In this document: positions 7,491-57,224 of the stretch, in pieces
Layout of the letters: each line of letters begins with the position of its first letter
How positions within the stretch are numbered: position 1 is the stretch's first letter
Origin: Bispira polyomma
Taxonomy: Eukaryota
Direction of reading: 5' to 3'
Assembly: GCA_965649765.1 (NCBI GenBank)
Contig: OZ287758.1
Span: 53,630,001 to 53,694,000, forward strand
DNA: 64,000 bases
Position numbers and translations under genes: made by a program
The notes under the pieces: generated by a model
Databases searched by the model: none
Seen by the model: only the letters and a program-made list of their open reading frames with translations
Told to the model about the DNA's origin: nothing

Positions 7491-8431
7491 TTCGTTTTGT
7501 ATTTATCTGTTATTAATTTAATTATTTAATTTGTTTGTCAATAGTGGTTTTTAAAACCTTGTAAAAGCTATAGCTACTGTTTATAACCTTTCATTGCAAT
7601 ACAACCCTATTTTTATGTTTATATGAGTTTTGGTACTAAATGTATGTTATGGCACTCAATGAATGATTATTTTTATTTAAACATTGAATTAGTATGTACG
7701 CATATGTGGCAATGTTTTATAGCTAATATATGGATTTCCCAAAGTAAATTGCTTTGGTTAAAATAGTCAATGCTTGACTTTTTCTAGTAATAAAATATAA
7801 TAAATATATGATTTGCAATTTCTAAATGTGTATTTATTGATGTTGCATATAACAATACTAGATTTGGCTAAATAAGTGAATTGTGGTAGTTTGTATGGTG
7901 AGGCCGGGGACTCAGCAGGGTCAGTGCTGCCAAAATATTGCTAAAACTATTCTTGTTCAGTCTCTAATTGGCTACACTGGGGTCATGACCCCAGCTATGG
8001 GGTCATAACCCCAGCTATTCCCGCTCTTTTCACATAATCCTCATTAAGACGCCATTTTTAAATATAAAAGTTATGCATTAGGAATTTACAGTCAGTTACA
8101 TTTACTGGATATTTTAGTGTAAACGTGGATCATCTTGAGGTGACTGGTGTGCTGGTTCCTGTACTTAAGGAGACTTAAAAAATACTCAATGTTTTGAGTC
8201 ATGCTCGTACTGCTCATAGAGCTTTGTTAGAGGAAAGTGCTTTTATCTTCTTATTTTTGGGTTTTATGATTTTACATATATCTAATTTATACACCTATAC
8301 CTTTATACATCAAATTTTACAACCAGTCAAAATAATATATAGAAAACCTCTAGCGTGCGTGCATGTATCAAGACCGGGTTATTCTATTTTCAGTATAAAC
8401 TATATAAACAATACAGAAGTAATAAATCACT

Positions 8432-9428
8432 ATGCCTAAAACATATAAATGTTCTAAGTGTGCTGGAAACCACAAGAGACCAGTGGGGAAAAAACTGTCA
8501 ATTTGTAGACAATGTTTTAGACAATTCCGGGGATGAAATGAATAATTCTTATAGTGAAAGTGAACACTCGTCAGTGAAATCAGTGAATATGAAAATCTTA
8601 GAAGAATTGAAGGAATTGGGAGGACGTATGTCAAAAATAGAGCAAAAAGTGAACTATGGTGACACATTAGGGGCTTCGGCCTCTCAGTATGATACTACTA
8701 AACCCGCTTCCACATCAAAGTCGACTGCGGAGGACGACCTGGTGAACCCTTCCCTGACAGTATTGAGACGCTCACAAACAGTCCAGTACCAGGTAGATGA
8801 CAGACTAAAGGAGCTGGCCCTGCTAAATAAGTCGGCTAGGTTCAAATCCCAAAGAGGGGGGTCAGAAACTGTTTATGTTAAGAGGCAGGTTCCATGGCCT
8901 CAAAGTTATGTGTTAGGGGGAAGCAACAAAGGTAGGGTCAGTTATGATCAGCTTTCAATGGTACAGTGGATAGCTGGATTTAGCGCTATAATACGCAAAG
9001 AATCTGATGTGGCTATCAAAAATCACATGTTAGATTACCTGAATGATATAATGGAGGACGTCCATGACTTCTCTTGGTCTGCCGCCAAGGGAGCTCATGC
9101 TGTCCTCTTGTGTAGAATGGAAGATGGCAAAGTAACATGGGGCGACACAAACCAAATTGAAAGAATAAGAAGGGCACATGCCCAAAAGGTATCTTATCAA
9201 AATGTGGGGGGTAGTTCAATTAAAAAAATTGGCAGAGACAAAACTACGGCAATCCTGTGTAGATTTTATCAAAAAGGTTCATGCTCTCACAAGTCAGACC
9301 ATGAATCAGGGGGTCAATTGTATTCTCATGTGTGTGTGACATGTGCTGGTTATGGCAAACAGCACACACATCCGGGAAAAGACTGTAAGAAAACTTCAAA
9401 CCAAAACTCAAACTCAAAAAACGATTAG
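8432..9428 (+). pseudogene. Gag-like ORF1 of element 1 (N-terminal CxxCxxxHxxPxGxxC finger, coiled coil, C-terminal Cys/His fingers); +1 frameshift in the A-run at 8489-8494
   Basis: ATG at 8432 gives MPKTYKCSKCAGNHKRPVGK. Removing one A joins it to the 8355-9428 frame (NCQ...), matching element-2 MPVYECSRCLTKHERPVGRNC. Shared motifs WPQ.YVL, DFSW..AK..HAV.L and CRFYQ.G.C...H...H.C..C...H....C. Confidence 0.88.
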
Positions 9429-9449
9429 GGCACTGCCAAGGGGCAGTGC
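9416..9449 (+). promoter_or_regulatory. -1 programmed ribosomal frameshift signal (gag to pol), element 1
   Basis: In-phase A_AAA_AAC (9416-9422), 7-nt spacer, then stem gcactgcc-aagg-ggcagtgc. The -1 frame reads into the 9446 ORF (KRLGHCQGAVHKR). Confidence 0.8.
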
Positions 9450-12314
9450 ACAAAAGATCAGAAAAAATCAAATATAATGAAGTGTTGGAGGTAAAGAAAT
9501 TTAATACTAGAATATGTGTAAATAGTGAAATGTGTGAAAGGGCGAGCATGAATTGGAGACACGACTGGAAGAAAGTAAATCAAATGTCTTATGCACAAGT
9601 GGTACAGGAAGGGAATAAAAAGGAAATCAGTAACAAAAACGAAAAAGTGGAAACAGTCCCCAAAATCAGCTCGTGCTTTCACAAAATGTCAAATAATGTT
9701 CATGTAAAAAGCAAATGGTCCGAAAACACTAACAAATGCATGTTTACAGGAAATGTAAAACAGAAATTGTATAAAAACACTAACCAATGTATGTTTACAG
9801 GGAATGTCAGGAAATGTCACCCACCAACAAGGGTGAATGCTGGCCCAATTGTTCCCAAATGGGTAAAAGGCAACAATAAGGTGGTTATTTCTCCCCCCCC
9901 CCCCCCGTCCCCAGGAAGGTGGTGTCAAAAAACACTCAGTGAACAAATTAATAATGACACTTTAAATGGCACACACAACAGGTTTTCCCCCCTAGAACAA
10001 TTTCAGTGTGAAGAAACCATAGTGATGGGTAACCAAGGGGAAATAGTAAATGATCCCACTGTGGAACCCCATAAAGGTCACAACATGACTAATCCAAAAC
10101 GAACAGATAACTCTAAGAACCAACATAACAGGTTTGTGCCCCAAGAACAATTTCAGTGTAAAGAAACCATAGTGACGGGTAACCAAGGGGAAACATTAGA
10201 TGATCCCACTGCGGAACCCCATAAGGGTCACAACATGACTAATACAAAACAAACGGGTAACTCAAAGAACCAACACAACAGGTTTCCCCCACTAGAACAA
10301 TTTCAATGTGAAGAAACCATAATGATAAGTAACCAAGGGGAAATAGTAAATGATCTCACTGCGGAACCCCATAGGGGTCATAACATGACTAATACAAAAC
10401 AAATGGGTGACTCAAAAAATCAGGTTATTTACACTGCTAAAACCAAAGCTAACCTCATGGGACGAGGTGAACTTAACTTAAAAGGGGATAGCAACAGTAA
10501 TATAAACACTGAGGATAAATATGAGTTTCAATTACAGGTGAAGCCAAAGCACAAGGATCTTATGCGTACAGCAGTAGATAATGCCACCTTCAGGGAATGG
10601 TATGACCAAAGCACTGACAAATTTGGGTTTGTTCCCCTAGGGGATTTAAAAATACCAACACGAGACAGGAAAAATAAAAGTAGTGCATCTATGTGCAAAC
10701 TACATGAGATCATAACAGGTGATAAACAGCATAACTTATTGTGGCTCTCAGATACAAATAGAATCTGAATTAAAACCAGACAAATGGGCAGAATTGCTAG
10801 GTGACTATTGGGATAAACAACTCTCCTTCCTAATACGCTATGGCTTTCCAGTTGACTTTGATAGATCAAATATGCTATCTCATAAAGATACAAATCACAA
10901 TTCTGCAAAATTTTACACTAAAGATGTTGAAGCATATTTAGAAGAAGAAAAGCAGTTCAAAGCTATACTAGGTCCGTTTAAGAAACCTCCAATAAAAAAC
11001 TTACATATATCACCCTTCATGACCAGGGAGAAGCCTGGGGGTGCACATAGAAGAGTCATAATTGATCTCAGCTTTCCTTTAGGTGAATCTGTCAATGCAG
11101 AGGTTCTAAGAAATAGCTACCTAGGCATGCATACCTTACCTACTATAGATGATGTCACAAATAAAGTTAGATGCTTAGGCAAAGGCTCCCTTTTGTACAA
11201 AACTTATGTCAGCCGGGTATTCCGGCACGTCAAAATGGACCCTAAAGACTATGACCTTTTAGCTTTAAAACTCGACGACTATTATGTGGACACGTGCCTG
11301 CCCTTTGGGTTCAGGCACGGAAGTGCAATATTCCAACACCTAAGTGACGCTATCCGCTTCATTATGTCTAAAAAGGGCTTTAAAGTCACAAATTACATTG
11401 ATGATGTCATAGGGTACGGTATGCCCAGTACGGCAGAAAAGTCTTTTAAAATGCTCCATAAACTTTTAGTAGATTTGGGTTTTGCAATTAGCCAGAAAAA
11501 ACTTATTAGCCCAGCTACTAGTGTTACATGTCTGGGTGTACTAATAAACACAGAAAATTTCACTGTCTCAATTCCACCGGAAAAACTCAATGATGTCAAG
11601 AATGTATGCCTAAAGTGGCATAAAAAAACACACTGTTCAAAACGAGATCTCCAATCATTACTAGGCAGCCTATTATATGTATCCAAGTGTGTTAAAGTTT
11701 CACGCTTTTTTCTAAACAGAATGCTTGATGTACTTCGCTCGGCACATGATGACAGGTCCATACAATTAACAACTGAATTCAAACAAGACCTTGCATGGTT
11801 CAGTAAATTCATTTCACAATTCAATGGTGTTGCTTTCTTCGACCATAGAATCCCCAAAATGGGTATAGAGCTAGATGCATGCTTGCAAGGTCTGGGTGGG
11901 CGATGGGGTAATCAGGTGTACACACTTCAACTTCCTCTACGCTTTCAAAATTACTCTATTGTTCACTTGGAGATGATCAATATTGTCGTGGCTATCCGGT
12001 TATGGGGTTGCCATTGGGCAGGAAATAAAATTGTGGTATTGTGCGACAATCAGGCGGTAGTCTCGGTACTTACCAATGGCAAAACTAGGGATCTTACTCT
12101 GGCAGCCATGGCTCGAAACATCCAGATGGAAGCTGCCAGGGCAGATATTGACCTACGAGTAGTACATGTCTTAGGTAAAAATAATGACGTAGCAGACTTG
12201 CTATCTAGATGGGCAATAACCAGCGAACCTTCAAACAGATTAAGGAAATTTATAGTAGAACCAATATGGTTACCTGTAGGGGTGGAAGCCACCCATCTTG
12301 ACTGGAATATTTGA
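9446..12314 (+). pseudogene. Pol of element 1: disordered N-terminus, reverse transcriptase and RNase H; frameshift near 10736 and motif-A Asp lost
   Basis: RVIIDLSFPLGESVN, LPFGFRHGS, YIDD, ELDACLQG, CDNQAVV, ADLLSR. ORFs 9446-10768 and 10719-12314 join at HN/YCGSQI. KTYVSRVFR replaces KVDISRAFR of element 2. Confidence 0.9.
9974..10423 (+). repeat. Three in-frame 150-bp (50 aa) tandem repeats in the pol N-terminal region
   Basis: HNRF.P.EQFQC.ETI...NQGE...D.T.EPH.GHNMTN units start at 9974, 10124 and 10274. Confidence 0.95.
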
Positions 12315-12327
12315 TTGTATTCTTTAG

Positions 12328-13324
12328 GTACAAATTCCTGGTTGGCAAAGGCAGCTGGCAGAGCAGCTGGAAGGGCTCATACAGCCTTCAGACCCTCCAC
12401 TCAAAAATCTTATAACTTTATGTTCAGAAACTTCCTAGCTTACTGTGTGTTTGCAAATATTGCAATACAACCAATCACGGCTACTATTCTCTTAGCTTTC
12501 CTCGCGGTTTTGGCTGAAAACAACACCTCTCACTCTGGTATAGCAAATTACTTGACTGTAATCAAGGCAAAGTTGGCCCTATATGGCCTTGACACCTCAG
12601 CCTTCATGGATCCTAGAATAAAGTATTTCCAAAAGGCAATTGCATTGCATAAACCCTTTAAAGTACAACTTAAATCCATCATTGACATTCCTCTGCTGAT
12701 CCAAATCATCAAAAAATGTGACTTTATGTACATGGGTCAGGTCTACAAGGCCATCTACCTCTTTGCATTTTTCTCATTCTTGAGAATATCAAATTTGGTT
12801 CCCCACTCTAACTCTACTTACTCACCCCTACAACACCTAGCCAGAGGTGACATCATATTTGCACCTCCTGGTCTTCAAGTACTGATTAAATGGAGTAAGA
12901 CATTACAGAGCAGGGATACAGTTAGACTTTTAAAAATACCCTCACTTGGGGGTTCCCCAATGTGTCCAGTGGCTGTCATTTCCAATATGCTTGCCATCAC
13001 TCCTGGTAAAAAAACTCGCCTCTGTTTCAATGTAAAAGCTTGGCCACGTGGCTCCCTATGACTGACACTAAAGTCAGGCGTAACTTCGCTATCATTCTTA
13101 AAGATCTTGGTTTGCAAAATTCTAACATCACTTTTCATTCTTTTAGACGTTCTGGAGCCACGTCGGCCTTTAACAAGAATGTTTCCATTCAAAATATTCA
13201 AAGTCATGGCACTTGGACCTCAGAATGCATCTGGCGCTACATTACACAAGACCATGACTCCTCTGACCAGGTGGCGTTGGCCTTTCAAAATTCAGTACAT
13301 CAACCTTCCTCTTCTACCTACTGG
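12328..13324 (+). pseudogene. Tyrosine recombinase of element 1; 1-nt deletion in the A-run near 13010; ancestral stop probably at 13322-13324
   Basis: FFSFLRISNL, HSFRRSGAT and HGTWTSECIWRY give the R-H-R-W-Y set. One extra A restores KKNSPLFQCKSLATWLP, homologous to GKDLPLFQFKQNAIWLP. ACC TAC TGG aligns with ACC TAC TAA of element 2. Confidence 0.9.
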
Positions 13325-13395
13325 TTGGGGTTTGGTGTTTTTAGTTCAGACAATAAACTTAAATGGCATTTATTACACTATATATTAGTCAATAC

Positions 13396-13658
13396 TTAAG
13401 GCCACCTTAACTTTACGTAACTTAAACTGTAATGTAATCTTAAATGAAGTAGTAAGATTCTTAACTATACTAACTTAAAGGATAATGTAATCTTAAATGA
13501 AGTTACTGTAATGTAATCTTAAATGAAGTAATAAGATTAGTAACTATACGTAACTTAAATTTAATGTAATCTTTAATGAAGTTAAGTCAACATCTTAAAC
13601 TCAGGCATGGACTTAAACTCATGCTCTTAACTTCAACATTAATTTAAGGTGGTCTTAA
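13396..13658 (+). other. Stem-enclosed CTTAA-rich repeat/hairpin domain in the element-1 3' UTR
   Basis: Arms ttaaggccaccttaa (13396-13410) and ttaaggtggtcttaa (13644-13658). The interior has ~4 copies of taatgtaatcttaaatgaagt. Confidence 0.8.
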
Positions 13659-15844
13659 TCTTTTAGTTAATGATATTACAATTTGTACATAATCTGTAGA
13701 TCTAACGTTAGTGAATTAAACTAATATGCCCAAAGAATGGTGTTTTATTTATATATTAATTCATAAATCCACACTTTGGGGAGGCACTGATAGTGGCTAT
13801 ATAAGATATAAGCAAAATATTCCATTTTCATGACCTATATTTTAGTAAACTTTGTTTTCTATTATTTTTAATATCATTCTGAAGCTGATGCCATGGGAAT
13901 CATTTATGTTGCATTTTGTTCTTTACCCGTCACCAAAAAAAATGGCTTACCAACAATGACAACAGTAAACTAAACAATAAAACCAGAATAAAAATAGTTG
14001 CCTTGCTGTATTTTGATTGAGAAACCTTTTTTTAGGTGTAATGAAGTTTGGGTTTAATGTTGCTGTCTTTTTTTATAGCACAATGGGTCGTTTTTGGTGG
14101 AAAATCCGAGCAGGGTTGTTGGTTAAGGGTTTTTGAAGCATTTGCTTTTCATTACCTTAGCTGTAATATATTTCCCTTAGTTTCATGTCCAAAACAGAAA
14201 ATAGATGTATGCCCTGATCTATATGTTGTAAGTTTGCTGAATAGATAAGGCTATGTGCTGCTTTTAGAGTCATTGGAGGAAGACTCCAGGGATGTGTTTG
14301 GCCTGGTTCTTAGACATAAACACCCCTGGGAAGATGTGATCAGTCACATTATACCAGTAAGTAATAAGGTCAATTCAGGAGTCTGTTTCACAGAAATAAA
14401 ATATGACATATAAAAAGTTTATGCATTTTAATTCTTCTTCTGGAAATAAACTTTTAGCATGATTTTAAACAGTTTTATTTCTCATTAATGCATACAGTTA
14501 CAAACATCACAATAAACAATACACACCACACTAATAATACAATTATAATTTATAGAAGAATAATTTGATTAGTTGTAACTTTTTATTCCATTTCTATATC
14601 ATCAGTCACTATATGCAACAAAATAGCAATAAAAGTAATGTGACGTCAGGCAAAATTACACATTACAATATACACTAAAAATACTATAATCTGTACTATT
14701 ACTGTTACAGGAATGCCAACTACACTTGAATGAATAAATTTGGCATATTTAAAAAAAAATAAATTTTGTCTTACACTTGAAAACGGTTTCCCAGTTGATC
14801 CAAGTTTTAAACATATTTTTTTCCAAACTGTTCATTTTGTTAGAAGTAACTAATCTCTATAGACCTGATTTAACCTAACTTTTAGAGCAATGTAATTCAA
14901 TATCCCACAAGACAAATCAAATCTATATACTTTTTGGTGACAATAATAAGAGTATTATTGGGGATCCTGTGGATATATGCTAAATGATGTATACCCTCAT
15001 GATGTATGCTATTTAAATCAATTGCTAAACGACTATTATTTAAGTTACAAATGTGGATACACATTCCTTAAATTTTTAGATTGTGATAGACTGGGTGCAA
15101 CAAACCAATTATAATGCCATCTAATCATGTAATTACATTACTATGTGCTAAGTGTGAGCACACACTTTCATTTTTAAAGTGTGATTAACTGCTTGCAATA
15201 AAACAAATAAGCATTCCATTTGTTATGTTATAACATGATTGAGTGAGACATGTGAGCAGGTACCCTCCCCCAGTATTTCAACTTGATTGTATTGAACTTG
15301 TTGCAATAAAACAAATCAGCATGCCATTTATCATTTATTCACATTAACATCACTGAGTACTGGGAATCATACATATTCAATACATATTCAAGAATATTCT
15401 CATTTGCTACCACATTCTTCAAAAGCTGCACACAAAATCAAAAGATACTATTTATGATTTAAGCAAAAAATACAGTTATTCAATGCAACTGCGTAGGGAT
15501 TAAATGTTGAAAAACAATTAATATTTATGACAAGTCAAATCAGTTAAGGTTTGCAAAGCTGAATCCAAATATGGATTTAGTTTTTCTGTCCACTTTTCAA
15601 TCGATACAAGGAGACCACAGATTTAAGCTTGGTATTAGTTTGAGCGAAGGTATACTTTACGAATATGGTAAACAAACATGTTTTTACCAGTAGTGTGTTC
15701 AGAATTGTGTATATTTTTGGCAATTTGCTATATTTAGCAGCTGAAGACCTATCGGAAAGTTTTGACACCACACGTTAGCAACAGCAACAGTACACATCTG
15801 ATAGAATTACAAGTCAAATGCACATAACCATTTTTAAAGCTGTT

Positions 15845-16669: not shown

Positions 16670-17782
16670 CTAACAGCAACCATCACTGGCAACCCTCGGT
16701 ATATACTTCTTAAATTGCAAGACATAAATGAATGGATTGATGATGCAATTGAGGTAGGCCATTATTATTGAAAACACATAAAATGGTGACCTGATCAATG
16801 CCTTGAACTGGATGATGCCAACATTTGCCAGAAAGAAGGCCACCTGGTTCCACACCCAGCAAACAAAGAATGCCACACATACCAAAATTAATGTCTTGAT
16901 CAGCTTGGTCTGCAGCTTCCCTTTCTTCTGCACCACCTCTGGTTTCTGCTTCTTCATTTTGATGGACACAGGTTCTTTATTATCTGAACCAAGAGAGTTG
17001 GCAATTGTAGAGTGCTTTTGTGACAAGGTACTGCTCTGTTCTCCTTGAGCATCAATAACAAAAGCTTCATTGATCACTCCATTATTAGCATCTGCTCCCA
17101 TGTTTTCTTTCTTGTTGGAGTCATCCACTTTAGATGAATTTCCATATTTCCGCAGCATTTTCTGCCCTTTCCTTATAGCCATCAATATTCGGATATAGCA
17201 AAACACCATGATCACAATAGGTGTGAAAAACTGCAGCATAAAAGTGGCAATTCCAGCACTTTTTGACATGGCTTTGGAGGCCAGAGTTCCAGCATGACAC
17301 AGGCTGTCCTTTACGTCAGATGCTGTGTAATAAAAGGCAATCTGATAAGCAAAGCCAAGGATCCAAGGCAACACCAAAGCTACAGCCATCTTCCATTTGC
17401 GATAAAAGGTGGAATATGTAAATGGGTGTACAATTTTGAAGTAGCGTTCCGCAGTTAAAATTACCATATTGAAGGTTGAAGATGTGATCAGAGCCCACAT
17501 AAACATATCTGTGTCCCAGAATTTGCAAAAAAATCTATCAGTAATGCTATCATCTTGGTAGGTGTGTGGCGTATACCCAAAGCCAACCACAATGTTACGG
17601 TAGCTAATACCCAAAAAGATAGAAGTCAGGGCATCAATGACACTCTGGTTCAGAATGAAATAACTTGATTTAGATTTCTTCAGATTCGGATGTCCAATCC
17701 AGGTCACAATCACCATAATGTTTAACAGTGCACCTAACACGGCTACTGAAGTGTGCAAAGTGGCTTGCCATATAACAACCAT
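16670..17782 (-). CDS. Class A (rhodopsin-like) orphan GPCR, galanin/allatostatin-receptor-like invertebrate expansion
   Basis: Uninterrupted 370 aa ORF with seven hydrophobic segments, NQSVID (TM2), Cys at the top of TM3, ERY, CW (TM6) and NCIINPFIY (TM7). Confidence 0.93.
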   Translation of the reverse strand: MVVIWQATLHTSVAVLGALLNIMVIVTWIGHPNLKKSKSSYFILNQSVIDALTSIFLGISYRNIVVGFGYTPHTYQDDSITDRFFCKFWDTDMFMWALITSSTFNMVILTAERYFKIVHPFTYSTFYRKWKMAVALVLPWILGFAYQIAFYYTASDVKDSLCHAGTLASKAMSKSAGIATFMLQFFTPIVIMVFCYIRILMAIRKGQKMLRKYGNSSKVDDSNKKENMGADANNGVINEAFVIDAQGEQSSTLSQKHSTIANSLGSDNKEPVSIKMKKQKPEVVQKKGKLQTKLIKTLILVCVAFFVCWVWNQVAFFLANVGIIQFKALIRSPFYVFSIIMAYLNCIINPFIYVLQFKKYIPRVASDGCC

Positions 17783-31260: not shown

Positions 31261-32370
31261 CTAATGGCACCCACTACAGGCGAGCCTTGGAATGTACTTC
31301 TTAAATTGCAAAACATAAATGAATGGATTGATGATGCAATTTACGTAAGCCATGATTACAGAGAACACATAAAATGGTGACCTGATCAAAGCCTTGAACT
31401 CGATGATGCCAACATTTGCCAGAAAGAAAGCCACCTGGTTCCACACCCAGCAAACAAAGAATGCCACACATATAAAAATTAATGTCTTTATCAGCTTGGT
31501 CTGCAAATTCCATTTCTTCCGCAACAACTCTGGTTTCTGCTTCTTCATCTGGATGGACACAGCTTTAGTATCTAAACTGAAAGAGACGGCCACTTTGGAG
31601 GATCCTTGTGAAAAGGTACTGCTCTGTTCCCCTTGAGCATCCCCAACATAAGCTTCATTTGCCACTCCATCGCTAGCCTCTGCTCCCATGTTTTCTTTCT
31701 TGTTTGAGTCATCCATTTCAGATGATTTGCCATAATTCTTCAGCATTTGCTGGCCTTTCCGTATGGCCATCAGTATTCGGACATAGCAAAACACCATGAT
31801 GACAATGGGTATGAAAAACTGCAGCATAAAGGTGGCGATTCCAGCACTTTTTCTCATGGCTTTGGAAGCTAGAGTTCCAGTTTGACACTGGTTATCCTTC
31901 ACATCAGAAGCTGTGTAATAAAAGGCAATCTGATACACAAATCCAAGGATCCAGGGCAGTGCCAAAGCTACAACCATCTTCCACTTGCGATAAAAGGTGG
32001 AATATGTAAATGGATGTACAATTTTGAAGTAGCGTTCGGCAGTTAAAATCACCAGATTGAAGGTTGAAGATGCGATTAGAGCCCACAAAAACTTATCAGT
32101 GTCCCAAAATTTGCATAGAAATCTATCAGTAATGCTATCATCTTGATAAGTGTGTGGTGTATACCCAAAGCCAACCACAATGTTACGGTAGCTAATACCC
32201 AAAAAAATAGAAGTCAGGGCATCAATTACACTCTGGTTCAGAATGAAATAACTTGATTTGGATTTCCTCAGATCCGGATTTCCTATCCAGATCACAATCA
32301 CCATACTGTTTGAGAGTGCACCCAACACAGCTGCTGCAGTGTACAAAGTGGCTTGCAATATAACAACCAT
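31261..32370 (-). CDS. Class A orphan GPCR, tandem paralog of 16670-17782
   Basis: Intact 369 aa ORF, colinear and highly similar to the first copy, with the same motifs (NQSVID, ERY, CW, NPFIY). Confidence 0.93.
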   Translation of the reverse strand: MVVILQATLYTAAAVLGALSNSMVIVIWIGNPDLRKSKSSYFILNQSVIDALTSIFLGISYRNIVVGFGYTPHTYQDDSITDRFLCKFWDTDKFLWALIASSTFNLVILTAERYFKIVHPFTYSTFYRKWKMVVALALPWILGFVYQIAFYYTASDVKDNQCQTGTLASKAMRKSAGIATFMLQFFIPIVIMVFCYVRILMAIRKGQQMLKNYGKSSEMDDSNKKENMGAEASDGVANEAYVGDAQGEQSSTFSQGSSKVAVSFSLDTKAVSIQMKKQKPELLRKKWNLQTKLIKTLIFICVAFFVCWVWNQVAFFLANVGIIEFKALIRSPFYVFSVIMAYVNCIINPFIYVLQFKKYIPRLACSGCH

Positions 32371-33265
32371 GATGTTTTACCAAGATAGACACTTGGTGTT
32401 TCAAGAGAGCAAAATAAAAAAATATAGATTTTTCACTCTAGTTAACTATTCCTGATGATGAAGCACATCCAAAAACTATAAACTACTGACAAATGTATCT
32501 ATATAATTCTACACCTATAAGAGAAGTGAACGTTCCTGCCAAGTTAGAAATGTAGAATAACTCTGGGAGAACTCTTTATATCTCTTACTTGCATCCTGGT
32601 CTAAAATTGCATGCATAAGTTACATTGTTAATAATAAGCCAATTGTACACATAATTATGAACAATTTATGGGCTGGAAAATGGAGTTGGTGAGTGTCTCA
32701 TTAATTATTGCAGAGTAAAAGGAACCTCTTTCACAATCTTCTTCACACCGTGGCCGCAAAATTTCCTTTTCTCTTTTCATTTTGTAATTTTCCAAGTTCT
32801 ACCAAGATCACAGGATACAACATAATAGGCTGAGATTAGAGCAGACACAAATTATTTAATAATTAGAGCATTAGGACTTATACTTTTGGACAGCAGGCAT
32901 CAGAATACATAATTTACTCTGTGTGAGAACTGCCCAGGATTAACTATAGTAATTAGATTATTTTTACAATAAGAGAGGGACTGTTGGGGACTGATACTTT
33001 TGGAGACTATGGGGCCATTCAAAACAGATAGCAGACCTCATTTACTCTGTGTTAGAAGTAGCAAGAATATTATTACAGTGAAGGTGGAGTCAACAGGTCC
33101 ATTTTAAAAATAAGTGCTCAGTTCCTCGGAGTAGTGCCTGAGGAAACTCAGTTAACCGAACAAGTCATAGAAAGACAATACTGCGATTAAATATATTTAT
33201 TTCATATTTACAGCTACTATTACTAAGATATTTATGTACAGTTCTTTGACATGATATGCACTTTG

Positions 33266-33499
33266 TGTGAGCATAAGGTCCCCTTAAGTCAACTGAGTTT
33301 AGGACTTTAGGTTAAACCAGAATGAGTTTAAGTCACCCTAACTAAGAAAGAAGTTGACTTTAGAAATTTAGATTTAAGTTGAAACTTAGATATGACTTTG
33401 AAGATTAACAAATTAAAGTTTGACTTAGGTTTTAAGTGGAACTTTAATTACATGAGTACAATATGTACTTTAATAATACAGGGGGACCTTATGCCCACA
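33266..33499 (-). other. Stem-enclosed multi-hairpin domain in the element-2 3' UTR
   Basis: 18-bp arms (sense tgtgggcataaggtcccc / ggggaccttatgctcaca, one G-U pair). Interior hairpins such as aattaaagtt..actta-aaacc-taagt..aactttaatt. Confidence 0.82.
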
Positions 33500-33588
33500 G
33501 TTAATTCATTTAGTTTACAGGTAATTAATATGCTACTTGCACTGTTAAACTGACTAGATCTTACAGTGATGCCACCAAACCCCAAAAT

Positions 33589-34574
33589 TTAGTAGGTATT
33601 TTGTAGAATAGTTTTAAAGGAATCGGCAACTTGAGTACCAGCATTGGCAGAATCCGAAATGTAACGCCAGACGCAATCGGACGTCCAGGTGCCGTGCCTT
33701 TGGATGTCCTGAATGGTGACATTATTGTTAAAGGCAAAGGTGGCACCTGAACGCCTGAAAGCGTGAAAGGTCAAGCCAGAGTACTGCGGGCCCAGCATTA
33801 GTAAGACATTCTTAAGATGCCTCCGAACCCTAGTATCAGTAAGGGGCAACCAAATGGCATTCTGCTTAAATTGAAACAAGGGCAGATCTTTCCCTTTAGG
33901 GGAAATAGCCAAACAGTTTTTTAAAGCTTGAACCGGACATAAGATGGAATTGGTTAAAGCTGGTATGGTGAGCAAGCGAACGGCATTATTGTTTTGAAGG
34001 GTTTTAGACCATTTAATAATGAGGACAGCGTACCCTGGCTTGAAAAGAACATCAGCCCTTGCAAGCTGCTTAAGAGGAGAGTAAGCAGCAACCGAATGAG
34101 CACAGAGGTTAGACAGCCTCAGAAAGGAAAAGAAACTGGTAAGATAGACTGCTTTAAAAATTCGACCCATGTAAGTACTGTCGCACTTTATAATAAGAGA
34201 CCTCAACAACTGGACGTCGAAAATTGACTTAAGTTTTACTTGCAATGGTCTATGCATCGCCAAAGCTTTATTATAATAGGTAATTCTTTTATCAGAAAAA
34301 ACATCTACGGATATATGGAAGAGGACACACTTAGCCTTAATGGCAGAAAGATGATTAAGAACTTGACTAGCCGACACACCATTAAACGTTAAAAACTCTA
34401 AATAAGCTAAGAGATATAACACAGTCACCTTTTGAGGAGGCCATGACATAAAGGCTCCAAACGCCACGAACAGCCTGAACATTCTGTTGTAGGCTCTGTT
34501 AGTGGCAGGGGTGAAGGCAAGTACAAGTCTGTCAGAAGCTTTCTGCATCAAGGAGATGGCCACAGGTTGTATAT
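33589..34574 (-). CDS. Tyrosine recombinase (lambda-integrase family) of element 2; probable second exon starting at 34574
   Basis: 324 aa open frame with FFSFLRLSNL, HAFRRSGAT and HGTWTSDCVWRY. It is preceded by a tgttttctag splice-acceptor-like site. Confidence 0.92.
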
Positions 34575-34597
34575 CTAGAAAACATGACTAACACGTG

Positions 34598-36997
34598 CTA
34601 TATAAGTGAGTTAACTTTTAATAAACTGCGGCAAGCAGGCAGCCACTGGACAGGCCCAGCTAACCTAAATAACGACAAATGGTCGGCTTCAGTTTCCGTC
34701 CATCTTGACAGCAAATCTGCAATTTTATTTTCTTTACCCAAAATATGTATGACAACAATATCAATATTAAACTTGCTAGCTAACATGTATATGTTCCTAG
34801 AATACGTGGCTAATTCGGGATCTCTGGTGCGCCCTGTCCGTAAGACACTTACAACTGCCTGATTATCACATCTGACCAATATTCTACGACCTTTCCATTT
34901 ATGAACCCACAATTTTAGAGCTACCAAGATGTTAAGCATCTCCAAAGAAGCAATATTGACCTCAGTCATTTCTGGAGGAATGTTAATTTGGTACACTTGT
35001 TTCTCAAAAATACCCCCCATTCCAGTAAGGCAGGCATCTAATTCAATCTCACCAGTTATGGGCTTAGGCATGAAAAAAGAGACTCCATTGAACTGTTCTG
35101 CAAAAGTAGTAAACCAATTTAAGTCACGCCTGAATTCAGGGGTGATGGCGATATACTTTCTGGTGTAATTATCTCGTAACAGCTCCAGCATCCTATTCAA
35201 AAAGACCCGAGCATACTTTACACATTTAGAGATATATAATAACAAGCCAAGTAAAGACTGGAGCTCTCTCTTAGTGTAGAATTTTTTGGATTTCCATTCG
35301 AGACACTTATCTTTAATTTGACTTAATTTCTCACCCGGGATGGAAGTAGTACCTCGAATGGTATCCACTACTATGCCCAGGCAGACGACCTGCGTGCTGG
35401 GAGGAACCAATTTTTTCTGACTTACTGTCAACCCCAACTCTTGTAGCAGTTCTTGCAATCTCAGGAAAGTTTTTTGAATTTTGCTGGGAACAGAAATAGC
35501 CAAGAAATCGTCGATGTAGTTGTGGACATTATGATTTTCAGAGTGCATTATGAATCGCACGGCATCCGAAATTCTCTGAAAAATCGTGCTACCATTACGA
35601 TATCCGAACAGCAGAGATCTGTCCACATAATAGGACTTCCACTTTAGACCTAGGAGGTCAACGTCGCCAGGGTCAATGGGTACGTGGCGGAACGCCCTAC
35701 TTATATCGACCTTGAATATCTCACATCCTCTCCCCAATTTTACCACCTCACTAGTGAGATTATCAATGGACGGATAAGACAGTAGAAATTCAACGCCCAA
35801 GTAAGAGGAAGGAGAAGCTCCCGCATTAACCGACCCCCCTTGAGGCCAACTCAAGTCTACAATTACTCTCCGGTTAATTGAGTTCGGTTTGTGTCTCGTC
35901 ATAAGGGGAGAACAGTGCAGGCCCGGAAGAGGAGGTTTGTCAAATGGCCCTAACATGGCGCCTAACTCACATTCTTCTTTCATATAAGCCTCTACATGCT
36001 GTGGATATTCCTCAGCCGACTTATGGTTACTCTCACTGGATTCCAATTTTACTGAATGATCGACGTCCAGGGGAAATCCATATTTTATGAGGAGAGGCAA
36101 TTGCCAATCCCAGTAATTTTTGAGGTATTTTTTCCAACTCTCGGGTCTTAATTGAGAGGGAACGGGGATTTGCAACCCTTCATAATTATGCCTGCCGTCA
36201 GCCCGAATTAAGTCATGCATTTGCAAAATGGAAAGTTCGGGCCCTCCCTCACCCTGATCTGCCATCTCACAGCCCAGAGCAGAGAGAGGAGTGAATCCAT
36301 ATGCATGTTGGGTTTGAGCTTGCCATTTTCTGTAAGTAGGATTTGAGGCAGCCTTAGCTAACATGCCTTTCTTATTTACTTTCTGTTTCAAGGCACAAGA
36401 GTACTTATCGGGACATTCGAGACTTTCCGGGCTATCTTCGGAAGCAGTTTTACTCCTGCCCTCGCCTCGGTCAACGGGCTTGTCACTAGGGCCAGAAAGG
36501 AATCGAACGGGCTCGTCCACATTTTCACCGTCATCGACCGGCAGCGACACTAAAGCTGTATACCTGTTAGCAAGAGGGAGGACAGCCACACCCCCATTGA
36601 CCCGCCTCTCTTCGCCCCCATTCAACCTCGAGCACTTGACCTCCTTTGTTATCACCTTGCCCTGTTTCGCACCCCGGCCTGGCTTCACAATGGAAGTCCA
36701 TTGGCCCACAGAGGTACCAAGGGGCCTCAACAATATGTCACTTTTGCCACGTAATATCTCTACCTTACTCTTGTCAACCCTAGCCTGTTTTACGGGCACA
36801 TCATTAACACTTCTATTTACACACCCATACTTTTGAACTGGGCCATTCTTTTGCAACGCCTGGCTATAACTCAAGCCTGGCCTGGTGCCCTTCACATATT
36901 TACACGTTTTTCGCCACACAGACCTCTCAAATAATTGTACACTCTTAAATTCAGTATTATAAACAAACCTACATTTGTGCTTTGCACTTTTAGCCAC
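34598..36997 (-). CDS. Pol (reverse transcriptase plus RNase H) of element 2, reached by -1 frameshift from gag
   Basis: 799 aa open frame: RVIVDLSWPQGGSVN, KVDISRAFRHV, LLFG (usually LPFG), YIDD, ELDACLTG, CDNQAVV, ADLLSR. No ATG near the start of the frame. Confidence 0.93.
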   Translation of the reverse strand: MAKSAKHKCRFVYNTEFKSVQLFERSVWRKTCKYVKGTRPGLSYSQALQKNGPVQKYGCVNRSVNDVPVKQARVDKSKVEILRGKSDILLRPLGTSVGQWTSIVKPGRGAKQGKVITKEVKCSRLNGGEERRVNGGVAVLPLANRYTALVSLPVDDGENVDEPVRFLSGPSDKPVDRGEGRSKTASEDSPESLECPDKYSCALKQKVNKKGMLAKAASNPTYRKWQAQTQHAYGFTPLSALGCEMADQGEGGPELSILQMHDLIRADGRHNYEGLQIPVPSQLRPESWKKYLKNYWDWQLPLLIKYGFPLDVDHSVKLESSESNHKSAEEYPQHVEAYMKEECELGAMLGPFDKPPLPGLHCSPLMTRHKPNSINRRVIVDLSWPQGGSVNAGASPSSYLGVEFLLSYPSIDNLTSEVVKLGRGCEIFKVDISRAFRHVPIDPGDVDLLGLKWKSYYVDRSLLFGYRNGSTIFQRISDAVRFIMHSENHNVHNYIDDFLAISVPSKIQKTFLRLQELLQELGLTVSQKKLVPPSTQVVCLGIVVDTIRGTTSIPGEKLSQIKDKCLEWKSKKFYTKRELQSLLGLLLYISKCVKYARVFLNRMLELLRDNYTRKYIAITPEFRRDLNWFTTFAEQFNGVSFFMPKPITGEIELDACLTGMGGIFEKQVYQINIPPEMTEVNIASLEMLNILVALKLWVHKWKGRRILVRCDNQAVVSVLRTGRTRDPELATYSRNIYMLASKFNIDIVVIHILGKENKIADLLSRWTETEADHLSLFRLAGPVQWLPACRSLLKVNSLI

Positions 36998-37027
36998 TGC
37001 ATTAACGCAGTGGCCCCTCAGTTTTTT
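36993..37027 (-). promoter_or_regulatory. -1 programmed ribosomal frameshift signal, element 2
   Basis: GCA_AAA_AAC_TGA with a 6-nt spacer, then stem gccactgc-gttaat-gcagtggc. The -1 frame reads KLRGHCVNAVAKS into pol. Confidence 0.82.
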
Positions 37028-38085
37028 GCCCCTTTCTTATGACATTCACTAGTCTGGTGGCTACCCTCACATGTCTCGCAATGATGTTTATATAACTGAC
37101 CTCCAGTATTGTGAGAGCTGGGAAATCGACAATTTCCTTCCTGATAAAAGCGACAAGACATTGCACCCTTACGACGTACAGACTTACTGCTACTCGAGTT
37201 ACTTGGCCGTCCATTCGCCCCAGAGGAATTTCTACTGTTCGACACATGGCGCTGAGCATGGGCTCTTCGGATTCGATCCATCTTATCTACCTCTAGCCAC
37301 CCCAACTTATCCATCTCCATACTTGTCAATACGACTGCATGGCAGGCCTTAGCTGACTCCCAAGAAAAATCCTGGGCATCCTCCATAAGACCCCCCATGT
37401 AATCCAGCATGGCATTCTTCACTTCGATCGACTTCTCCTCGTGGGCAATCCGAGCGAAACCACACACCCATTGCAACACGGTTAACTCATCGTAGCTAGG
37501 CCGAGACTTAGAACTACCCGTGAGCACATAGTTTTGAGGCCAAGCGGTGACCTTTTTTACCAACACCTCATTCGCCCCACTACGCTGGGACTTCAGTTTA
37601 CCTTGCGAGGTGGTCTCATTCAACGTCTTGAGATCTTTCAATCTCTGCTCCACTTGGAGCTGTATTAGGGCATTCTGGTTTAAAAAATCTATGCCAGGAA
37701 TTATACTGTCGGACGTAGCGATAGATGGGCTCTTACCTACGCCAGCAGAGCAACTAGCAGGCCTGTCAACACTAGAACTAATCAAACTACTACTTGCCTG
37801 AACGGGGACCTGATGACTGGGCTGACTACTGGTGAGGTTCGTCGCCAATGCTGCCTCATTCCTCTGAACCCGCTGGTCCATTTTTACCATTAACTCGTTC
37901 ATCGAGTGCAGTTGGAGTAGTATCGCGTTCGTAACTGCATCGCCAGACTCACCGTTTGCGGGTTCAGTGTCAGAGGCAGCATCGATCTCCTCCCCAGAGG
38001 CAGAGTCAACGGTTGCAATAACGCAATTTCGCCCTACAGGACGCTCATGTTTGGTTAAACATCGACTACACTCATAGACAGGCAT
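37018..38085 (-). CDS. Gag-like ORF1 of element 2
   Basis: 355 aa with an N-terminal CSRCLTKHERPVGRNC finger, coiled coils and a C-terminal CRFYQEGNC...H...HHCETC...H....C cluster; homologous to the element-1 ORF1. Confidence 0.9.
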   Translation of the reverse strand: MPVYECSRCLTKHERPVGRNCVIATVDSASGEEIDAASDTEPANGESGDAVTNAILLQLHSMNELMVKMDQRVQRNEAALATNLTSSQPSHQVPVQASSSLISSSVDRPASCSAGVGKSPSIATSDSIIPGIDFLNQNALIQLQVEQRLKDLKTLNETTSQGKLKSQRSGANEVLVKKVTAWPQNYVLTGSSKSRPSYDELTVLQWVCGFARIAHEEKSIEVKNAMLDYMGGLMEDAQDFSWESAKACHAVVLTSMEMDKLGWLEVDKMDRIRRAHAQRHVSNSRNSSGANGRPSNSSSSKSVRRKGAMSCRFYQEGNCRFPSSHNTGGQLYKHHCETCEGSHQTSECHKKGAKN

Positions 38086-38143
38086 AACTAAAAGGTGTTT
38101 CCACTAAAATACTGTAAAATATAAAAACATATACACCACCAAC

Positions 38144-38231
38144 AAAATGGCACCCAAACAATTTTAAACTAGTTGTTGCTCTGCTGACGAACGATAAAGG
38201 CGGGAGATTTTGAAAAGGAGAGCCTTATATA
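38144..38231 (-). promoter_or_regulatory. Putative internal Pol II promoter of element 2 (TATATAA; GCCATTTT YY1-like motif)
   Basis: TATATAA at 38231-38225 and GCCATTTT at 38151-38144. Element 1 has CGCCATTTT (8050) and TATAAAA (8063). Both share a tattttagtg.aaac block upstream of gag. Confidence 0.5.
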
Positions 38232-38879
38232 GTCGTACACCATCCCATAATAGTAGACCAGGCTGGTACCCCAGAACTGAGGCCACGAACGCTGAGGGCA
38301 TTCGCTTACACATCTCTATTAGGGGTACTGGTGTTACATTCAGACAAAAAGGATGGTAATAATCCCTGCCTTCGATATGTGTTTAAACACTTTACCTGTA
38401 GAATGTTGAGAAAGTGGACAGACTGTACTACATCTGTTATACCAAAGCAGTAATTGACTCTATCGCTTACCATTTCAGAGATATTCGCCATTTGATGAAA
38501 ATTGAGGAGGGCTGCTAGAAAATCTCTCTCCCATTCGCCACTGTGGTGAAACAGCTAATTTTGGTAAATATTCAAGAAATATTATTATGCTGTATAAACC
38601 ATACATTTATCCATTTAATTTATATATACGCATATGTGGCTGTGTTTTACACCTAAGATATCGATTTGTGTTATTATTATTACAGTCATTAGTGCTGAAA
38701 TTACTGCCAAATTAATTTAAATGATCATATTATAGAAATGAAATCGGATAATGAAATTTGGCAAAATAATGCTGAAGTGTTATGTCAATGATAAAACAAA
38801 ACAATCAAGTATGTTTGAAAATGCACGGCTTTGGTTAAAATATTCAATTCTAGAGTTTTTGAGGCAAGAGATATAGAAT

Positions 38880-56492: not shown

Positions 56493-57224
56493 TAGTTAAG
56501 CATAAAATATAAGCTGTTGGGAGAGATATATACCCTTGTGACCTTTATATATCTACGTTTATAACTAACTGTGCGCAAAATACTAACATGTTCTTCAAAA
56601 TAAGACTTAAACAAGAAAGAAACATATAAACTACACAAACAATATGTAACATATATATATATAGTCCACCTTTTGGTGGCAAGTTTCATATTCATATTGT
56701 AAATATGTACAAAAATATGAGCGTTTCAAGGCATATTAAATCAATGGATCAATTTTAATAATGTCTTACTTTTTAGGAAGATATATATATATATACTTTT
56801 TTCTATCTGTGTGAATATCTATTGTGGAGTAAATTACAGAAGAAACATTTAAATCCAGAAGTATATCAGAAGTACTCGCTTTCACTTTGCCTATAAGCAA
56901 TCCTTAAAGTTACAGACAAATTACCTATTTTAAATTTGGGACTAGTGGTCAATCATAGAAGTAGTATTGCTCAATAATGTAGAAATTTACACTTTATAAT
57001 GACTACATATATATGATAGTAGACCAGTGATAATTTATTGTATGTAATTAGCCATGAACTTAATAAACAAAATAAATAGTGTCATTTAGCCTGTCTAGAT
57101 TGGCTTGACAACAAGTGTTGGACATTAAATAGACTTTTAACGCTTGCTCAATTTGCATGATATTTTAATTATTGGTTTCTTTTTCAACCTCAAATGTCAG
57201 TTATTCCTCTCTAAATTGGCTCAG

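What the first reader, a model, noticed from the sequence alone, without database searches (positions are those of the whole stretch)
33266..33499. 3' structured domain conserved in architecture, not sequence, between two divergent elements
Seen: 70-90 nt after the YR stop, both elements have a long closing stem (18 bp in element 2; 15 bp in element 1 at 13396-13410/13644-13658). The arm sequences are unrelated, yet each single mismatch is a G-U pair only on the sense strand. Each stem encloses ~200-235 nt rich in CTTAA/TAAGTC hairpins, with shared words (gacttaaa[a]ctcat, taaactcag, taagtcaa, aacttaaat). Both are preceded by TACCTACT..TTGGGGTTTGGTG and followed by TGTACATAA. Inference: a selected RNA or ssDNA structure, such as an RT priming/packaging signal (no tRNA primer-binding site is evident), a retron-like template, or an array of recombinase-binding half-sites.
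Basis: partly seen in the sequence, partly recalled or inferred. Interest (0 to 1): 0.8.

Follow-up and report, generated by a model that had tools for sequence, protein, structure and literature searches.

The report
Inverted-repeat module in Ngaro repeat B
The hairpin-like region after the recombinase gene is real, but it is a lineage-specific block of one repeated palindromic word inside the known terminal repeat "B" of Ngaro-type retrotransposons, and whether it works as folded RNA/cDNA or as a protein-binding platform is still open.

Summary
Both stems exist as described: element 2 at 33266-33283/33482-33499 and element 1 at 13396-13410/13644-13658.

- **The arms are related.** All nine families examined share a palindromic word, about TAAGGTCACCTTA. 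It recurs in the interior and is about 10 times denser in this region than elsewhere in the element.
- **The G-U bias is not general.** "G-U only on the sense strand" holds for the two window copies only. Relatives mostly show A·C on the sense strand.

Complete relatives show what the region is. It is the 5' part of repeat B of Ngaro-type tyrosine-recombinase retrotransposons (A1-ORFs-B1-A2-X-B2). It sits between a deeply conserved G-rich motif at B's 5' edge and a UGUA/AAUAAA poly(A) signal, 130-180 nt upstream of the B|A crossover. Distant Ngaro relatives have a B of only about 95 nt without it, so it is a clade-specific addition.

The long inverted repeat is significant in 5 of 9 families and conserved between close relatives. 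Clean compensatory changes are few, and both strands fold equally well.

I favour a sequence-specific protein-binding platform (about 0.45) over a folded RNA/cDNA element (about 0.35). Retron-like and MITE readings are rejected.

The parts
33119..38312 (-). Element 2: intact Ngaro-type YR retrotransposon in the monomer form A-I-B. Gag is 38085-37018, RT/RNase H is 36997-34598 and YR is 34563-33589. There is no A2/X/B2.
   Evidence: Pfam RVT_1/RVT_3. 381 YR homologues, with catalytic R, K, H, R, H and Y among the invariant or nearly invariant columns. The ends were set by homology to the B|A junctions of complete relatives and agree with an insertion of about 5.15 kb relative to paralogous host units.
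33119..33576 (-). Element 2 repeat B, as a single copy. It runs from the second G-run of the G-motif to ...GAGGAACTG.
   Evidence: Homology to B1/B2 of L002, L004, L024 and L025. The end motif GGAACTG is at 33125-33119.
33573..33585 (-). G-rich motif TTGGGGTTTGGTG at the YR stop / 5' edge of B.
   Evidence: Present in 9 of 9 families and, as TTTGGGTTTGGGG, in relatives with 27-34% YR identity. The B1/B2 identity starts inside it.
33482..33499 (-). Element 2 5' arm in the sense orientation: TGTGGGCATAAGGTCCCC.
33284..33481 (-). Element 2 interior: 198 nt, G-poor on the sense strand, with copies of the variant word (T/A)AAGTCA(A/C)C in both orientations.
   Evidence: Interior MFE z = -2.9 sense and -3.5 antisense.
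33266..33283 (-). Element 2 3' arm in the sense orientation: GGGGACCTTATGCTCACA.
   Evidence: Best inverted-repeat score 34 against 19.6 +/- 2.1 in shuffles.
33196..33240 (-). Element 2 poly(A) signal block: TGTACATA 33240-33233, TGTAAATA 33212-33205, AATAAA 33201-33196.
   Evidence: TGTA(A/C)ATA is present in 8 of 9 families in a fixed orientation. Reading it as a UGUA upstream element plus AAUAAA rests on general knowledge, not on a test here.
38140..38312 (-). Element 2 repeat A (promoter part): start TGTGTAAGCG at 38312, CAGTTCTGGGGTACCAG, TATATAAGG at 38231-38223. The 3' limit is approximate.
   Evidence: Homology to A1/A2 of L002, L004, L033 and L025.
7892..13789 (+). Element 1: older, degenerate Ngaro-type element in the form A-I-B, with a frameshifted YR (12315-13061 and 13040-13399). 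The 5' limit is tentative.
   Evidence: Pfam. Host-paralogue bracketing 7850-14805. B end GGCACTG at 13783-13789.
13325..13337 (+). Element 1 G-rich motif.
13396..13410 (+). Element 1 5' arm TTAAGGCCACCTTAA, itself a near-palindromic copy of the word.
13411..13643 (+). Element 1 interior, 233 nt. It includes a 79-nt x2 tandem repeat (13426-13584) carrying degenerate words, followed by GTTAAGTCAAC, CTTAAACTCAG and GACTTAAACTCAT.
13644..13658 (+). Element 1 3' arm TTAAGGTGGTCTTAA.
13684..13720 (+). Element 1 TGTACATA (13684-13691) and ATTAAA (13715-13720).

Best explanation
**What it is (shown).** The domain is a clade-specific expansion of the 5' part of repeat B of an Ngaro-type tyrosine-recombinase retrotransposon. 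Complete relatives have the layout A1-gag-RT/RH-YR-B1-A2-X-B2, and the two window copies are A-I-B monomers. B starts inside a conserved G-rich motif. It then carries this module, then UGUA...AAUAAA, and it ends at ...GAACTG|TG(T)GGGG, which is the B|A junction and the element's insertion boundary. The module is built from 2-5 copies of one palindromic word, about (C)ATAAGGTCACCTTA(CCAT), with the variant TTAAGTCAAC in the window elements. The "closing stem" is the outermost pair of oppositely oriented, extended copies of that word.

**How it most likely works (inferred, about 0.45).** It is a platform of binding sites for a sequence-specific, probably dimeric, protein acting on the double-stranded DNA form. 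B lies directly upstream of promoter A and of the crossover in every B-A junction and in the circular intermediate. The platform would therefore act in one of two ways:
- as accessory sites that assemble the recombinase complex on the element's own site, like the arm-type sites of attP;
- as a U3-like enhancer for promoter A.

A folded single-strand role is the close second (about 0.35).
For: - **Split direct repeats in relatives.** L002, L004, L024 and the L025-31 family have them. B1 and B2 are 99.7-100% identical, and the domain lies inside B.
- **Regeneration of B.** B1 and B2 of one copy share copy-specific variants.
- **Junction and insertion boundaries.** These are defined.
- **Word conservation.** The word is conserved in 7-9 of 9 families and occurs equally in both orientations. 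RGGTCA occurs 27 times against 3.2 expected.
- **Word density.** The word is about 10 times denser in B than in the rest of the element.
- **Palindromy.** It runs right to the centre: 75% Watson-Crick at +/-2 to 6, and 20 of 28 at +/-1.
- **Variable layout.** Copy number, spacing and orientation vary, and sub-blocks are tandemly duplicated in element 1 and L023.
- **Centre-base flip.** An interior word flips its centre base (TCA to TGA) between close relatives without being lost.
- **Other arrangements of the same half-site.** It also occurs as DR1 (GGGTCAAAGGTCA, L002 B end), as an everted repeat (TGACCCCTTGGGGTCA, L003 B end), as IR0 x2 in element 1's A region (7978-8017), and in X.
- **No strand bias.** There is none in wobble pairs, and L024, L035 and L036 share a conserved A·C mismatch.
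- **Cross-family pairing.** Arms from different families pair nearly as well as arms from the same family.
- **Not core machinery.** Distant Ngaro relatives lack the module, so it is not part of the basic replication machinery.
Against: - In 5 of 9 families the inverted repeat is longer than any cross-family pairing and extends beyond the word with family-specific sequence (el2 34 vs 24, L002 38 vs 31). A pure site array does not require this.
- Closing arms can differ from the interior words of the same element (C-type arms and T-type interior words in L024; CCC-type arms in element 2). That looks like selection for pairing.
- The intact element 2 has no exact RGGTCA in B, which argues against a fixed host factor.
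- No binding protein is identified.
- In the integrated form, promoter A1 has no B upstream of it.
- The word's half-sites (5 bp plus a 1-3 nt centre) are too short for a classical tyrosine-recombinase core site.
Confidence: 0.45

Rival explanations
1. The module is a folded single-stranded cis element on genomic RNA and/or minus-strand cDNA. A long closing helix with local hairpins sits in the transcribed, R-like part of B. It could serve reverse transcription (RT recognition or self-priming, or strand transfer between B2 and B1 in the manner of TAR/R hairpins). It could instead serve an RNA-level step: dimerisation through the palindromes, packaging, export, or control of the adjacent poly(A) site.
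For: - MFE z-scores run from -2.4 to -8.4 for the whole domain in all nine families.
- The inverted repeat is significant against shuffles in el2, L002, L024, L003 and L004, and in those families it exceeds all cross-family pairings.
- Within-family arms are more complementary than permuted arms: 156 against 125.8 +/- 5.7, 0 of 20000 permutations (the arms were chosen as the best pairs, so this is biased upward).
- Arms are about 100% conserved between L002 and L032 while about 60 nt of the interior is scrambled.
- The position is fixed: 72-130 nt after the G-motif and 22-55 nt before UGUA.
- Two pairs changed on both sides in local hairpins of the L024 family.
- The primer of YR retroelements is unknown, and a 3' hairpin has been proposed as the primer for DIRS-1 (PMC7192593).
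Against: - There is no preference for G-U over A-C on the sense strand.
- The antisense strand is equally or more stable.
- Almost all stem pairs are invariant rather than covarying, and the A·C mismatch is kept in three relatives.
- Interiors alone are weakly structured.
- Different word pairs form the "closing" stem in different families, and the block GACTT(A/G)AACT lies inside the stem in el1/el2 but outside it in L002/L032.
- L001, L023 and L025 have several short stems rather than one closing helix.
- Distant Ngaro elements replicate without the module.
- The stem is not at the RNA 3' end, so self-priming would need a cleavage step.
Confidence: 0.35
2. The module is a neutral by-product: slippage and inverted duplications of an AT-rich 3' UTR segment with no function of their own.
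For: - Tandem duplications occur inside the domain (79 nt x2 in element 1, about 130 nt x2 in L023).
- Length varies from 47 to more than 400 nt.
- Distant relatives lack the module.
Against: - The word and both arms persist across families with 45-60% YR identity and in at least three different assemblies, while the surrounding non-coding sequence cannot be aligned.
- The arms are the most conserved non-coding segments between close relatives.
Confidence: 0.1
3. The module is a MITE or foldback DNA transposon that inserted into the 3' UTR of an ancestral element.
For: It has 15-30 bp terminal inverted repeats bounding an AT-rich interior of 50-235 bp.
Against: - No consistent target-site duplication flanks the arms.
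- The word also occurs inside the domain and outside it.
- The module is present at the same place in every family of the clade and in both B1 and B2.
- No free-standing copies were seen in the window or in the loci fetched (one search scanned for the neighbouring G-motif only, so this was not searched exhaustively).
Confidence: 0.03
4. The module is a retron-like msr/msd template copied into multicopy single-stranded DNA.
For: The only support is an inverted repeat lying near an RT gene.
Against: - The RT is a retrotransposon RT with RNase H, in a eukaryotic Gag-RT/RH-YR element.
- The repeat lies 3' of the YR gene inside a terminal direct repeat.
- Rfam gives no match.
Confidence: 0.01

Closest known systems
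Ngaro retrotransposons (DIRS order) with split direct repeats A1-[ORFs]-B1A2B2, as described in PMC8547959 and PMC4157794 (after Goodwin & Poulter / Poulter & Goodwin)
   Same: - Gene order Gag-RT/RH-YR with no methyltransferase.
- Complete relatives have A1...B1A2...B2 with B1 abutting A2.
- Insertions have no target-site duplication.
- Repeat-less or solo derivatives exist.
   Different: - In this clade B is 370-670 nt rather than about 95 nt, because of the word/inverted-repeat module.
- A non-coding X segment of 0.65-2 kb separates A2 from B2.
- Both window copies are A-I-B monomers lacking A2/X/B2.
- I found no description of a module inside B in the searchable literature.
DIRS-1 internal complementary region and the 3' hairpin noted by Poulter & Goodwin as a possible primer (PMC7192593)
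   Same: - A cis element 3' of the coding region in a YR retroelement whose primer is unknown.
- The B1-A2 junction plays the ICR-like role of carrying the circle junction.
   Different: - DIRS-1 has inverted terminal repeats plus an ICR, and its hairpin is short and lies at the RNA 3' end.
- Here the repeats are direct, and the inverted repeat encloses 47-235 nt.
- Here it lies upstream of the poly(A) signal.
U3 enhancer repeats of LTR retroelements
   Same: - Positional analogy: the region follows a G-rich PPT-like motif, lies at the 3' end of the RNA, and ends up directly upstream of the promoter in the DNA junction.
- It holds repeated short motifs with variable copy number and tandem duplications.
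   Different: - In the integrated element, promoter A1 has no B upstream of it.
- No transcription factor is identified.
- The resemblance of the half-site to RGGTCA nuclear-receptor half-sites comes from memory and was not tested.
Arm-type and accessory sites of tyrosine-recombinase attachment sites (lambda attP; cer/psi accessory sequences)
   Same: An array of protein-binding repeats lies within a few hundred bp of the crossover, on the mobile partner, which recombines with poorly conserved targets.
   Different: - Binding of the Ngaro YR to these words is untested.
- The words are palindromic.
- The array lies 130-400 bp from the crossover, mostly on one side.

Membership tests
Ngaro (YR retrotransposon, DIRS order) | Encodes RT/RNase H and a tyrosine recombinase, with Gag upstream. 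| tested here: met
   Pfam RVT_1, RVT_3/RT_RNaseH, Phage_integrase and SAM-like hits. 381 YR homologues, with R149, K187, H267, R270, H290 and Y301 invariant or nearly invariant.
Ngaro (YR retrotransposon, DIRS order) | No methyltransferase domain (this separates Ngaro from DIRS1/PAT). | tested here: met
   No methyltransferase family among the Pfam hits for any ORF of either element. The N-terminal 270-400 aa of the RT ORF are unassigned.
Ngaro (YR retrotransposon, DIRS order) | Split direct repeats A1-[ORFs]-B1A2B2. | tested here: inconclusive
   Met in relatives L002, L004, L024 and L025-31, with an extra X between A2 and B2. Also met in canonical form in distant relatives L008 and L020. 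Not met in the two window copies, which carry one A and one B only and are read here as monomer or deletion derivatives.
Ngaro (YR retrotransposon, DIRS order) | Insertion without target-site duplication, at a defined circle junction. | tested here: met
   Six independent insertions of one family among the seven loci fetched (L030 and L031 have identical flanks) share the ends TGTGGGG... and ...ACACTG, with variable flanks and no duplication. Overlaps of 2-6 nt occur in L002 and L004.
DIRS1-like | Inverted terminal repeats plus an internal complementary region. | tested here: not met
   No inverted terminal repeats in either element or in the relatives.
Structured RNA element (covariation-supported) | Base pairs maintained by compensatory changes, with G-U favoured on the functional strand. 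| tested here: inconclusive
   Within-family arms are more complementary than permuted or cross-family arms. Against that, only 2 of 38 pairs changed on both sides in the one three-member alignment, and there is no sense G-U bias.
Retron | Bacterial RT with adjacent msr/msd inverted repeats producing msDNA. | tested here: not met
   Eukaryotic retrotransposon context. No Rfam match.
MITE | Terminal inverted repeats with flanking target-site duplication and dispersed free copies. | tested here: not met
   No consistent duplication flanks the arms. The module is fixed at one position in B in all families. Dispersed copies were not searched genome-wide.
LTR-retroelement-type priming (tRNA PBS / PPT) | An 11-18 nt match to a tRNA 3' end next to a repeat, and a purine tract at the 5' edge of the 3' repeat. 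| not tested
   No tRNA complementarity search was run. The G-rich motif sits exactly at B's 5' edge, which is PPT-like in position only.

The most novel reading that the evidence does not exclude
The closing helix is the long-sought initiation site for minus-strand cDNA synthesis in this clade of YR retrotransposons. RT would recognise the word hairpins in the B2 copy at the RNA 3' end, or, after a cut, the 3' arm would prime on the 5' arm. The intact internal B1 copy would then restore the sequence lost from B2, which would explain why B has to be duplicated.
Probability: 0.1. Interest if true: 0.8.

Novelty: new variant of a known kind. Interest (0 to 1): 0.45.

Why it matters
How tyrosine-recombinase retrotransposons prime reverse transcription, close their circular intermediate and choose their recombination site is largely unknown. 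PMC7192593 states that the primer is not known.

This work places a conserved, clade-specific cis module precisely on the Ngaro map:
- it lies inside repeat B;
- it lies between a deeply conserved G-rich boundary motif and the poly(A) signal;
- it lies 130-180 nt from the B|A crossover.

It also reduces the module to one palindromic word. That gives short, concrete probes for binding and structure experiments. It also gives a diagnostic signature for annotating this Ngaro lineage, including monomer copies that lack the textbook split repeats.

If the module proves to be only an enhancer-like motif array, it is an ordinary feature of a known element type.

Tried and rejected
- **Rfam.** A scan of both regions gave only chance hits (E 0.5-0.8).
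- **IMG/VR.** A scan for YR relatives found none.
- **JGI metagenomes.** The scan found only distant relatives (27-34% identity). They lack the module, which was informative, but they could not be used for covariation.
- **Terminal repeats in the window copies.** None were found.
- **Long-range complementarity.** None links B to the 5' UTR of element 2.
- **Close-relative alignments.** L032/L002, L033/L003, L034/L004 and L035/L036/L024 gave conserved arms but almost no compensatory double changes.
- **Wobble strand bias.** The test did not favour the sense strand.
- **Interior folding.** The signal is weak on its own.
- **Helical phasing of word spacings.** I looked at this by hand from the positions. 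The suggestion was weak and rested on a spacing of about 26-27 bp seen in three families, so I do not rely on it.
- **Failed look-ups.** Two contig look-ups failed for lack of a slot. One was repeated successfully.
- **Searches not run.** The large protein search and structure prediction were not used, because protein identity was not in doubt.
- **Literature.** No paper in the library describes a hairpin or palindromic module in Ngaro repeats.

Full report
**Context**

The window is AT-rich eukaryotic DNA with no N. It contains diverged tandem host units that include two intronless rhodopsin-type GPCR genes. Two retroelements lie in it, both with the gene order Gag, RT/RNase H, tyrosine recombinase (YR).
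- Element 2 is on the minus strand and all its ORFs are intact.
- Element 1 is on the plus strand and is older; its YR is split by a frameshift.
- The two are 51% (RT/RH) and 48% (YR) identical at the amino-acid level.

**Checking the observation**

- Element 2: 33266-33283 pairs with 33482-33499, 18 bp with one mismatch, which is G-U on the sense strand.
- Element 1: 13396-13410 pairs with 13644-13658, 15 bp with one sense G-U.

Both regions fold far better than dinucleotide shuffles, z = -7.2 and -5.2. The flanking motifs TTGGGGTTTGGTG and TGTACATA and the shared interior words are confirmed. Taken alone, element 1's stem is only marginally better than the best inverted repeat in shuffles.

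**What the region is**

A word search with the YR of element 2 gave 381 homologues at 45-60% identity, on large ENA contigs. I fetched loci for 12 of them.

Complete relatives show split direct repeats.
- In L004, A1 is 3101-3267, B1 is 8000-8373, A2 is 8372-8538, a unique non-coding X is 8539-9694, and B2 is 9695-10068.
- L002, L024 and the seven-locus family L025-31 (six independent insertions; L030/L031 are duplicates) have the same layout.
- This is the Ngaro architecture A1-[ORFs]-B1A2B2 described in PMC8547959 and PMC4157794, with an added X.

B has a fixed layout:
- B starts inside the G-rich motif. Only the second G-run belongs to the repeat.
- The first arm follows 72-130 nt later.
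- After the second arm come TGTA(A/C)ATA, A(A/T)TAAA and a GU-rich stretch. From general knowledge this reads as a UGUA/AAUAAA/downstream-element poly(A) signal.
- B ends at ...GAACTG.

The B|A junction ...ACTG|TG(T)GGGG coincides with the element's insertion boundaries. Six independent insertions of one family have variable flanks and no target-site duplication. B1 and B2 of one copy share copy-specific variants, so B is regenerated at each transposition, as LTRs are.

By homology, element 2 spans 38312-33119. It is an A-I-B monomer without A2/X/B2, and its size agrees with the insertion size inferred from paralogous host units. Element 1, L001, L003 and L034 are monomers too.

**The module is clade-specific**

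More distant YR relatives (27-34% identity, from JGI metagenomes) are canonical Ngaro elements. Their B is only about 95 nt.
- They keep the G-rich motif (TTTGGGTTTGGGG) and AATAAA but have no inverted-repeat module.
- The module is therefore an insertion into B in one lineage, not part of the core Ngaro machinery.

**Anatomy of the module**

The arms are not unrelated. Every family carries a palindromic word, about (C)ATAAGGTCACCTTA, in its arms, and further copies lie in the interior in both orientations.
- Element 1 has TTAAGGCCACCTTAA.
- Element 2 has CATAAGGTCCCC.
- Both window elements use the variant TTAAGTCAAC in the interior.
- The half-site RGGTCA occurs 27 times in nine B repeats, against 3.2 expected.
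- The word is about 10 times denser in B than in the rest of the element.
- The palindromy runs to the centre of the word.
- The same half-site also appears as a DR1, as an everted repeat and as two IR0 copies, at B ends, in A and in X.

**Is it a fold?**

Evidence for a fold:
- Whole-domain MFE z-scores run from -2.4 to -8.4 in all nine families.
- The best inverted repeat is significant against shuffles in el2, L002, L024, L003 and L004. In those five families it also beats every cross-family arm pairing.
- Arms are about 100% conserved between close relatives, and about 60 nt of the L002/L032 interior is scrambled.
- Closing arms can differ from the interior words of the same element.

Evidence against a fold:
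- Cross-family pairings already score a mean of 20 and up to 31, because the shared word pairs with itself.
- The antisense strand folds as well or better in 7 of 9 families, and the interiors alone are weakly structured.
- Transition mismatches favour A·C rather than G·U on the sense strand: 5-6 against 3 in closing stems, and 16 against 6 in words.
- L024, L035 and L036 keep the same A·C mismatch, and only 2 of 38 consensus pairs changed on both sides.
- An interior word flips its centre base between relatives.
- L001, L023 and L025 have several short stems rather than one closing helix.

**Mechanism**

Shown:
- the module's position in B;
- its conservation;
- its word composition.

Inferred: its function. 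The data fit a sequence-specific recognition platform slightly better than a covarying fold. The word is conserved in sequence, is palindromic, varies in number and orientation, and also occurs in other half-site arrangements near the promoter and the junction.

B lies directly upstream of promoter A and of the crossover in every B-A junction. The platform could therefore nucleate the recombinase complex on the element's own site, or act as a U3-like enhancer. I give this about 0.45.

A folded RNA or minus-strand cDNA element is the close rival, at about 0.35. It could serve RT recognition or priming, B2-to-B1 strand transfer, dimerisation, or control of the poly(A) site. It would be the more interesting outcome, because the primer of YR retroelements is unknown (PMC7192593).

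The remaining readings score as follows:
- neutral by-product: 0.1;
- MITE insertion: 0.03;
- retron-like template: 0.01.

**Known families**

The elements are Ngaro-type by gene content, by the absence of a methyltransferase, by the split repeats in relatives and by insertion without target-site duplication. DIRS1-like membership fails, because there are no inverted terminal repeats. Rfam has no matching family. I found no description of such a module in the searchable literature. I therefore rate it a new variant of a known kind.

**Limits**

- Only 16 elements of the clade could be fetched. Most come from one assembly (ERZ22147071), one comes from ERZ25073805, and two come from the window.
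- Covariation statistics are therefore weak.
- The resemblances to nuclear-receptor half-sites and to UGUA/PUF motifs come from memory and were not tested.

Noticed in passing
window 13325-13337 and 33573-33585; L008:4046, L009:4751, L013:588, L021:2041 and others: The G-rich motif TTGGGGTTTGG (TTTGGGTTTGGGG in distant relatives) follows the YR stop in every Ngaro-type element seen, down to 27% YR identity. The 5' boundary of repeat B falls inside it. Its position is PPT-like. In distant relatives its GTTTGGGG can pair with CCCCAAAC just after AATAAA, enclosing the poly(A) signal.
   Followed up: partly
L002:8594-9714, L004:8539-9694, L024:8645-10623, L025:8783-9429: Complete elements of this clade carry a non-coding X segment (0.65-2 kb) between A2 and B2, which the textbook Ngaro layout lacks. 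X starts with a C-rich motif (CCCTCCCT...) followed by a splice-acceptor-like tttcag|G. Its first ~300 nt are 76% identical between L002 and L004, and it has no ORF of 80 aa or more.
   Followed up: partly
L026:7906-11622: The unit B-A-X is tandemly repeated (B1-A2-X-B2-A3-X-B3, all 100% identical). A-X-B therefore behaves as an amplifiable, possibly non-autonomous unit.
   Followed up: no
window 7978-8017: A 20-nt unit is repeated twice (TGGGGTCATGACCCCAGCTA). Each unit contains a perfect palindrome of the GGGTCA half-site. It lies in the presumed promoter repeat A of element 1, just upstream of the TTCCCGC block.
   Followed up: partly
window 9973-10422: A 150-nt x3 tandem repeat (87-89% identity) lies inside the ORF between gag and RT of element 1 (9446-10768). 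It encodes three 50-aa repeats that element 2's continuous 799-aa ORF lacks.
   Followed up: no
window 16670-17782 (-) and 31261-32370 (-); repeat units near 7675, 23249, 38605, 60868: Two intronless 7tm_1 GPCR paralogues sit in diverged tandem host units of about 15-22 kb. Both retroelements inserted into copies of this unit, which gave approximate empty-site comparisons.
   Followed up: partly
window 58465-59751 (-): A 428-aa ORF with a NADAR domain (Pfam E = 2.5e-17).
   Followed up: no
window 57220-57617: An array of a satellite-like unit of about 20 nt (TTAAGTAACAAGACCACATT and variants).
   Followed up: no
L002:2360-3052 (-): A second, fragmentary YR gene with its G-motif lies on the opposite strand next to the complete element. 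No long closing stem was detected downstream of it.
   Followed up: no
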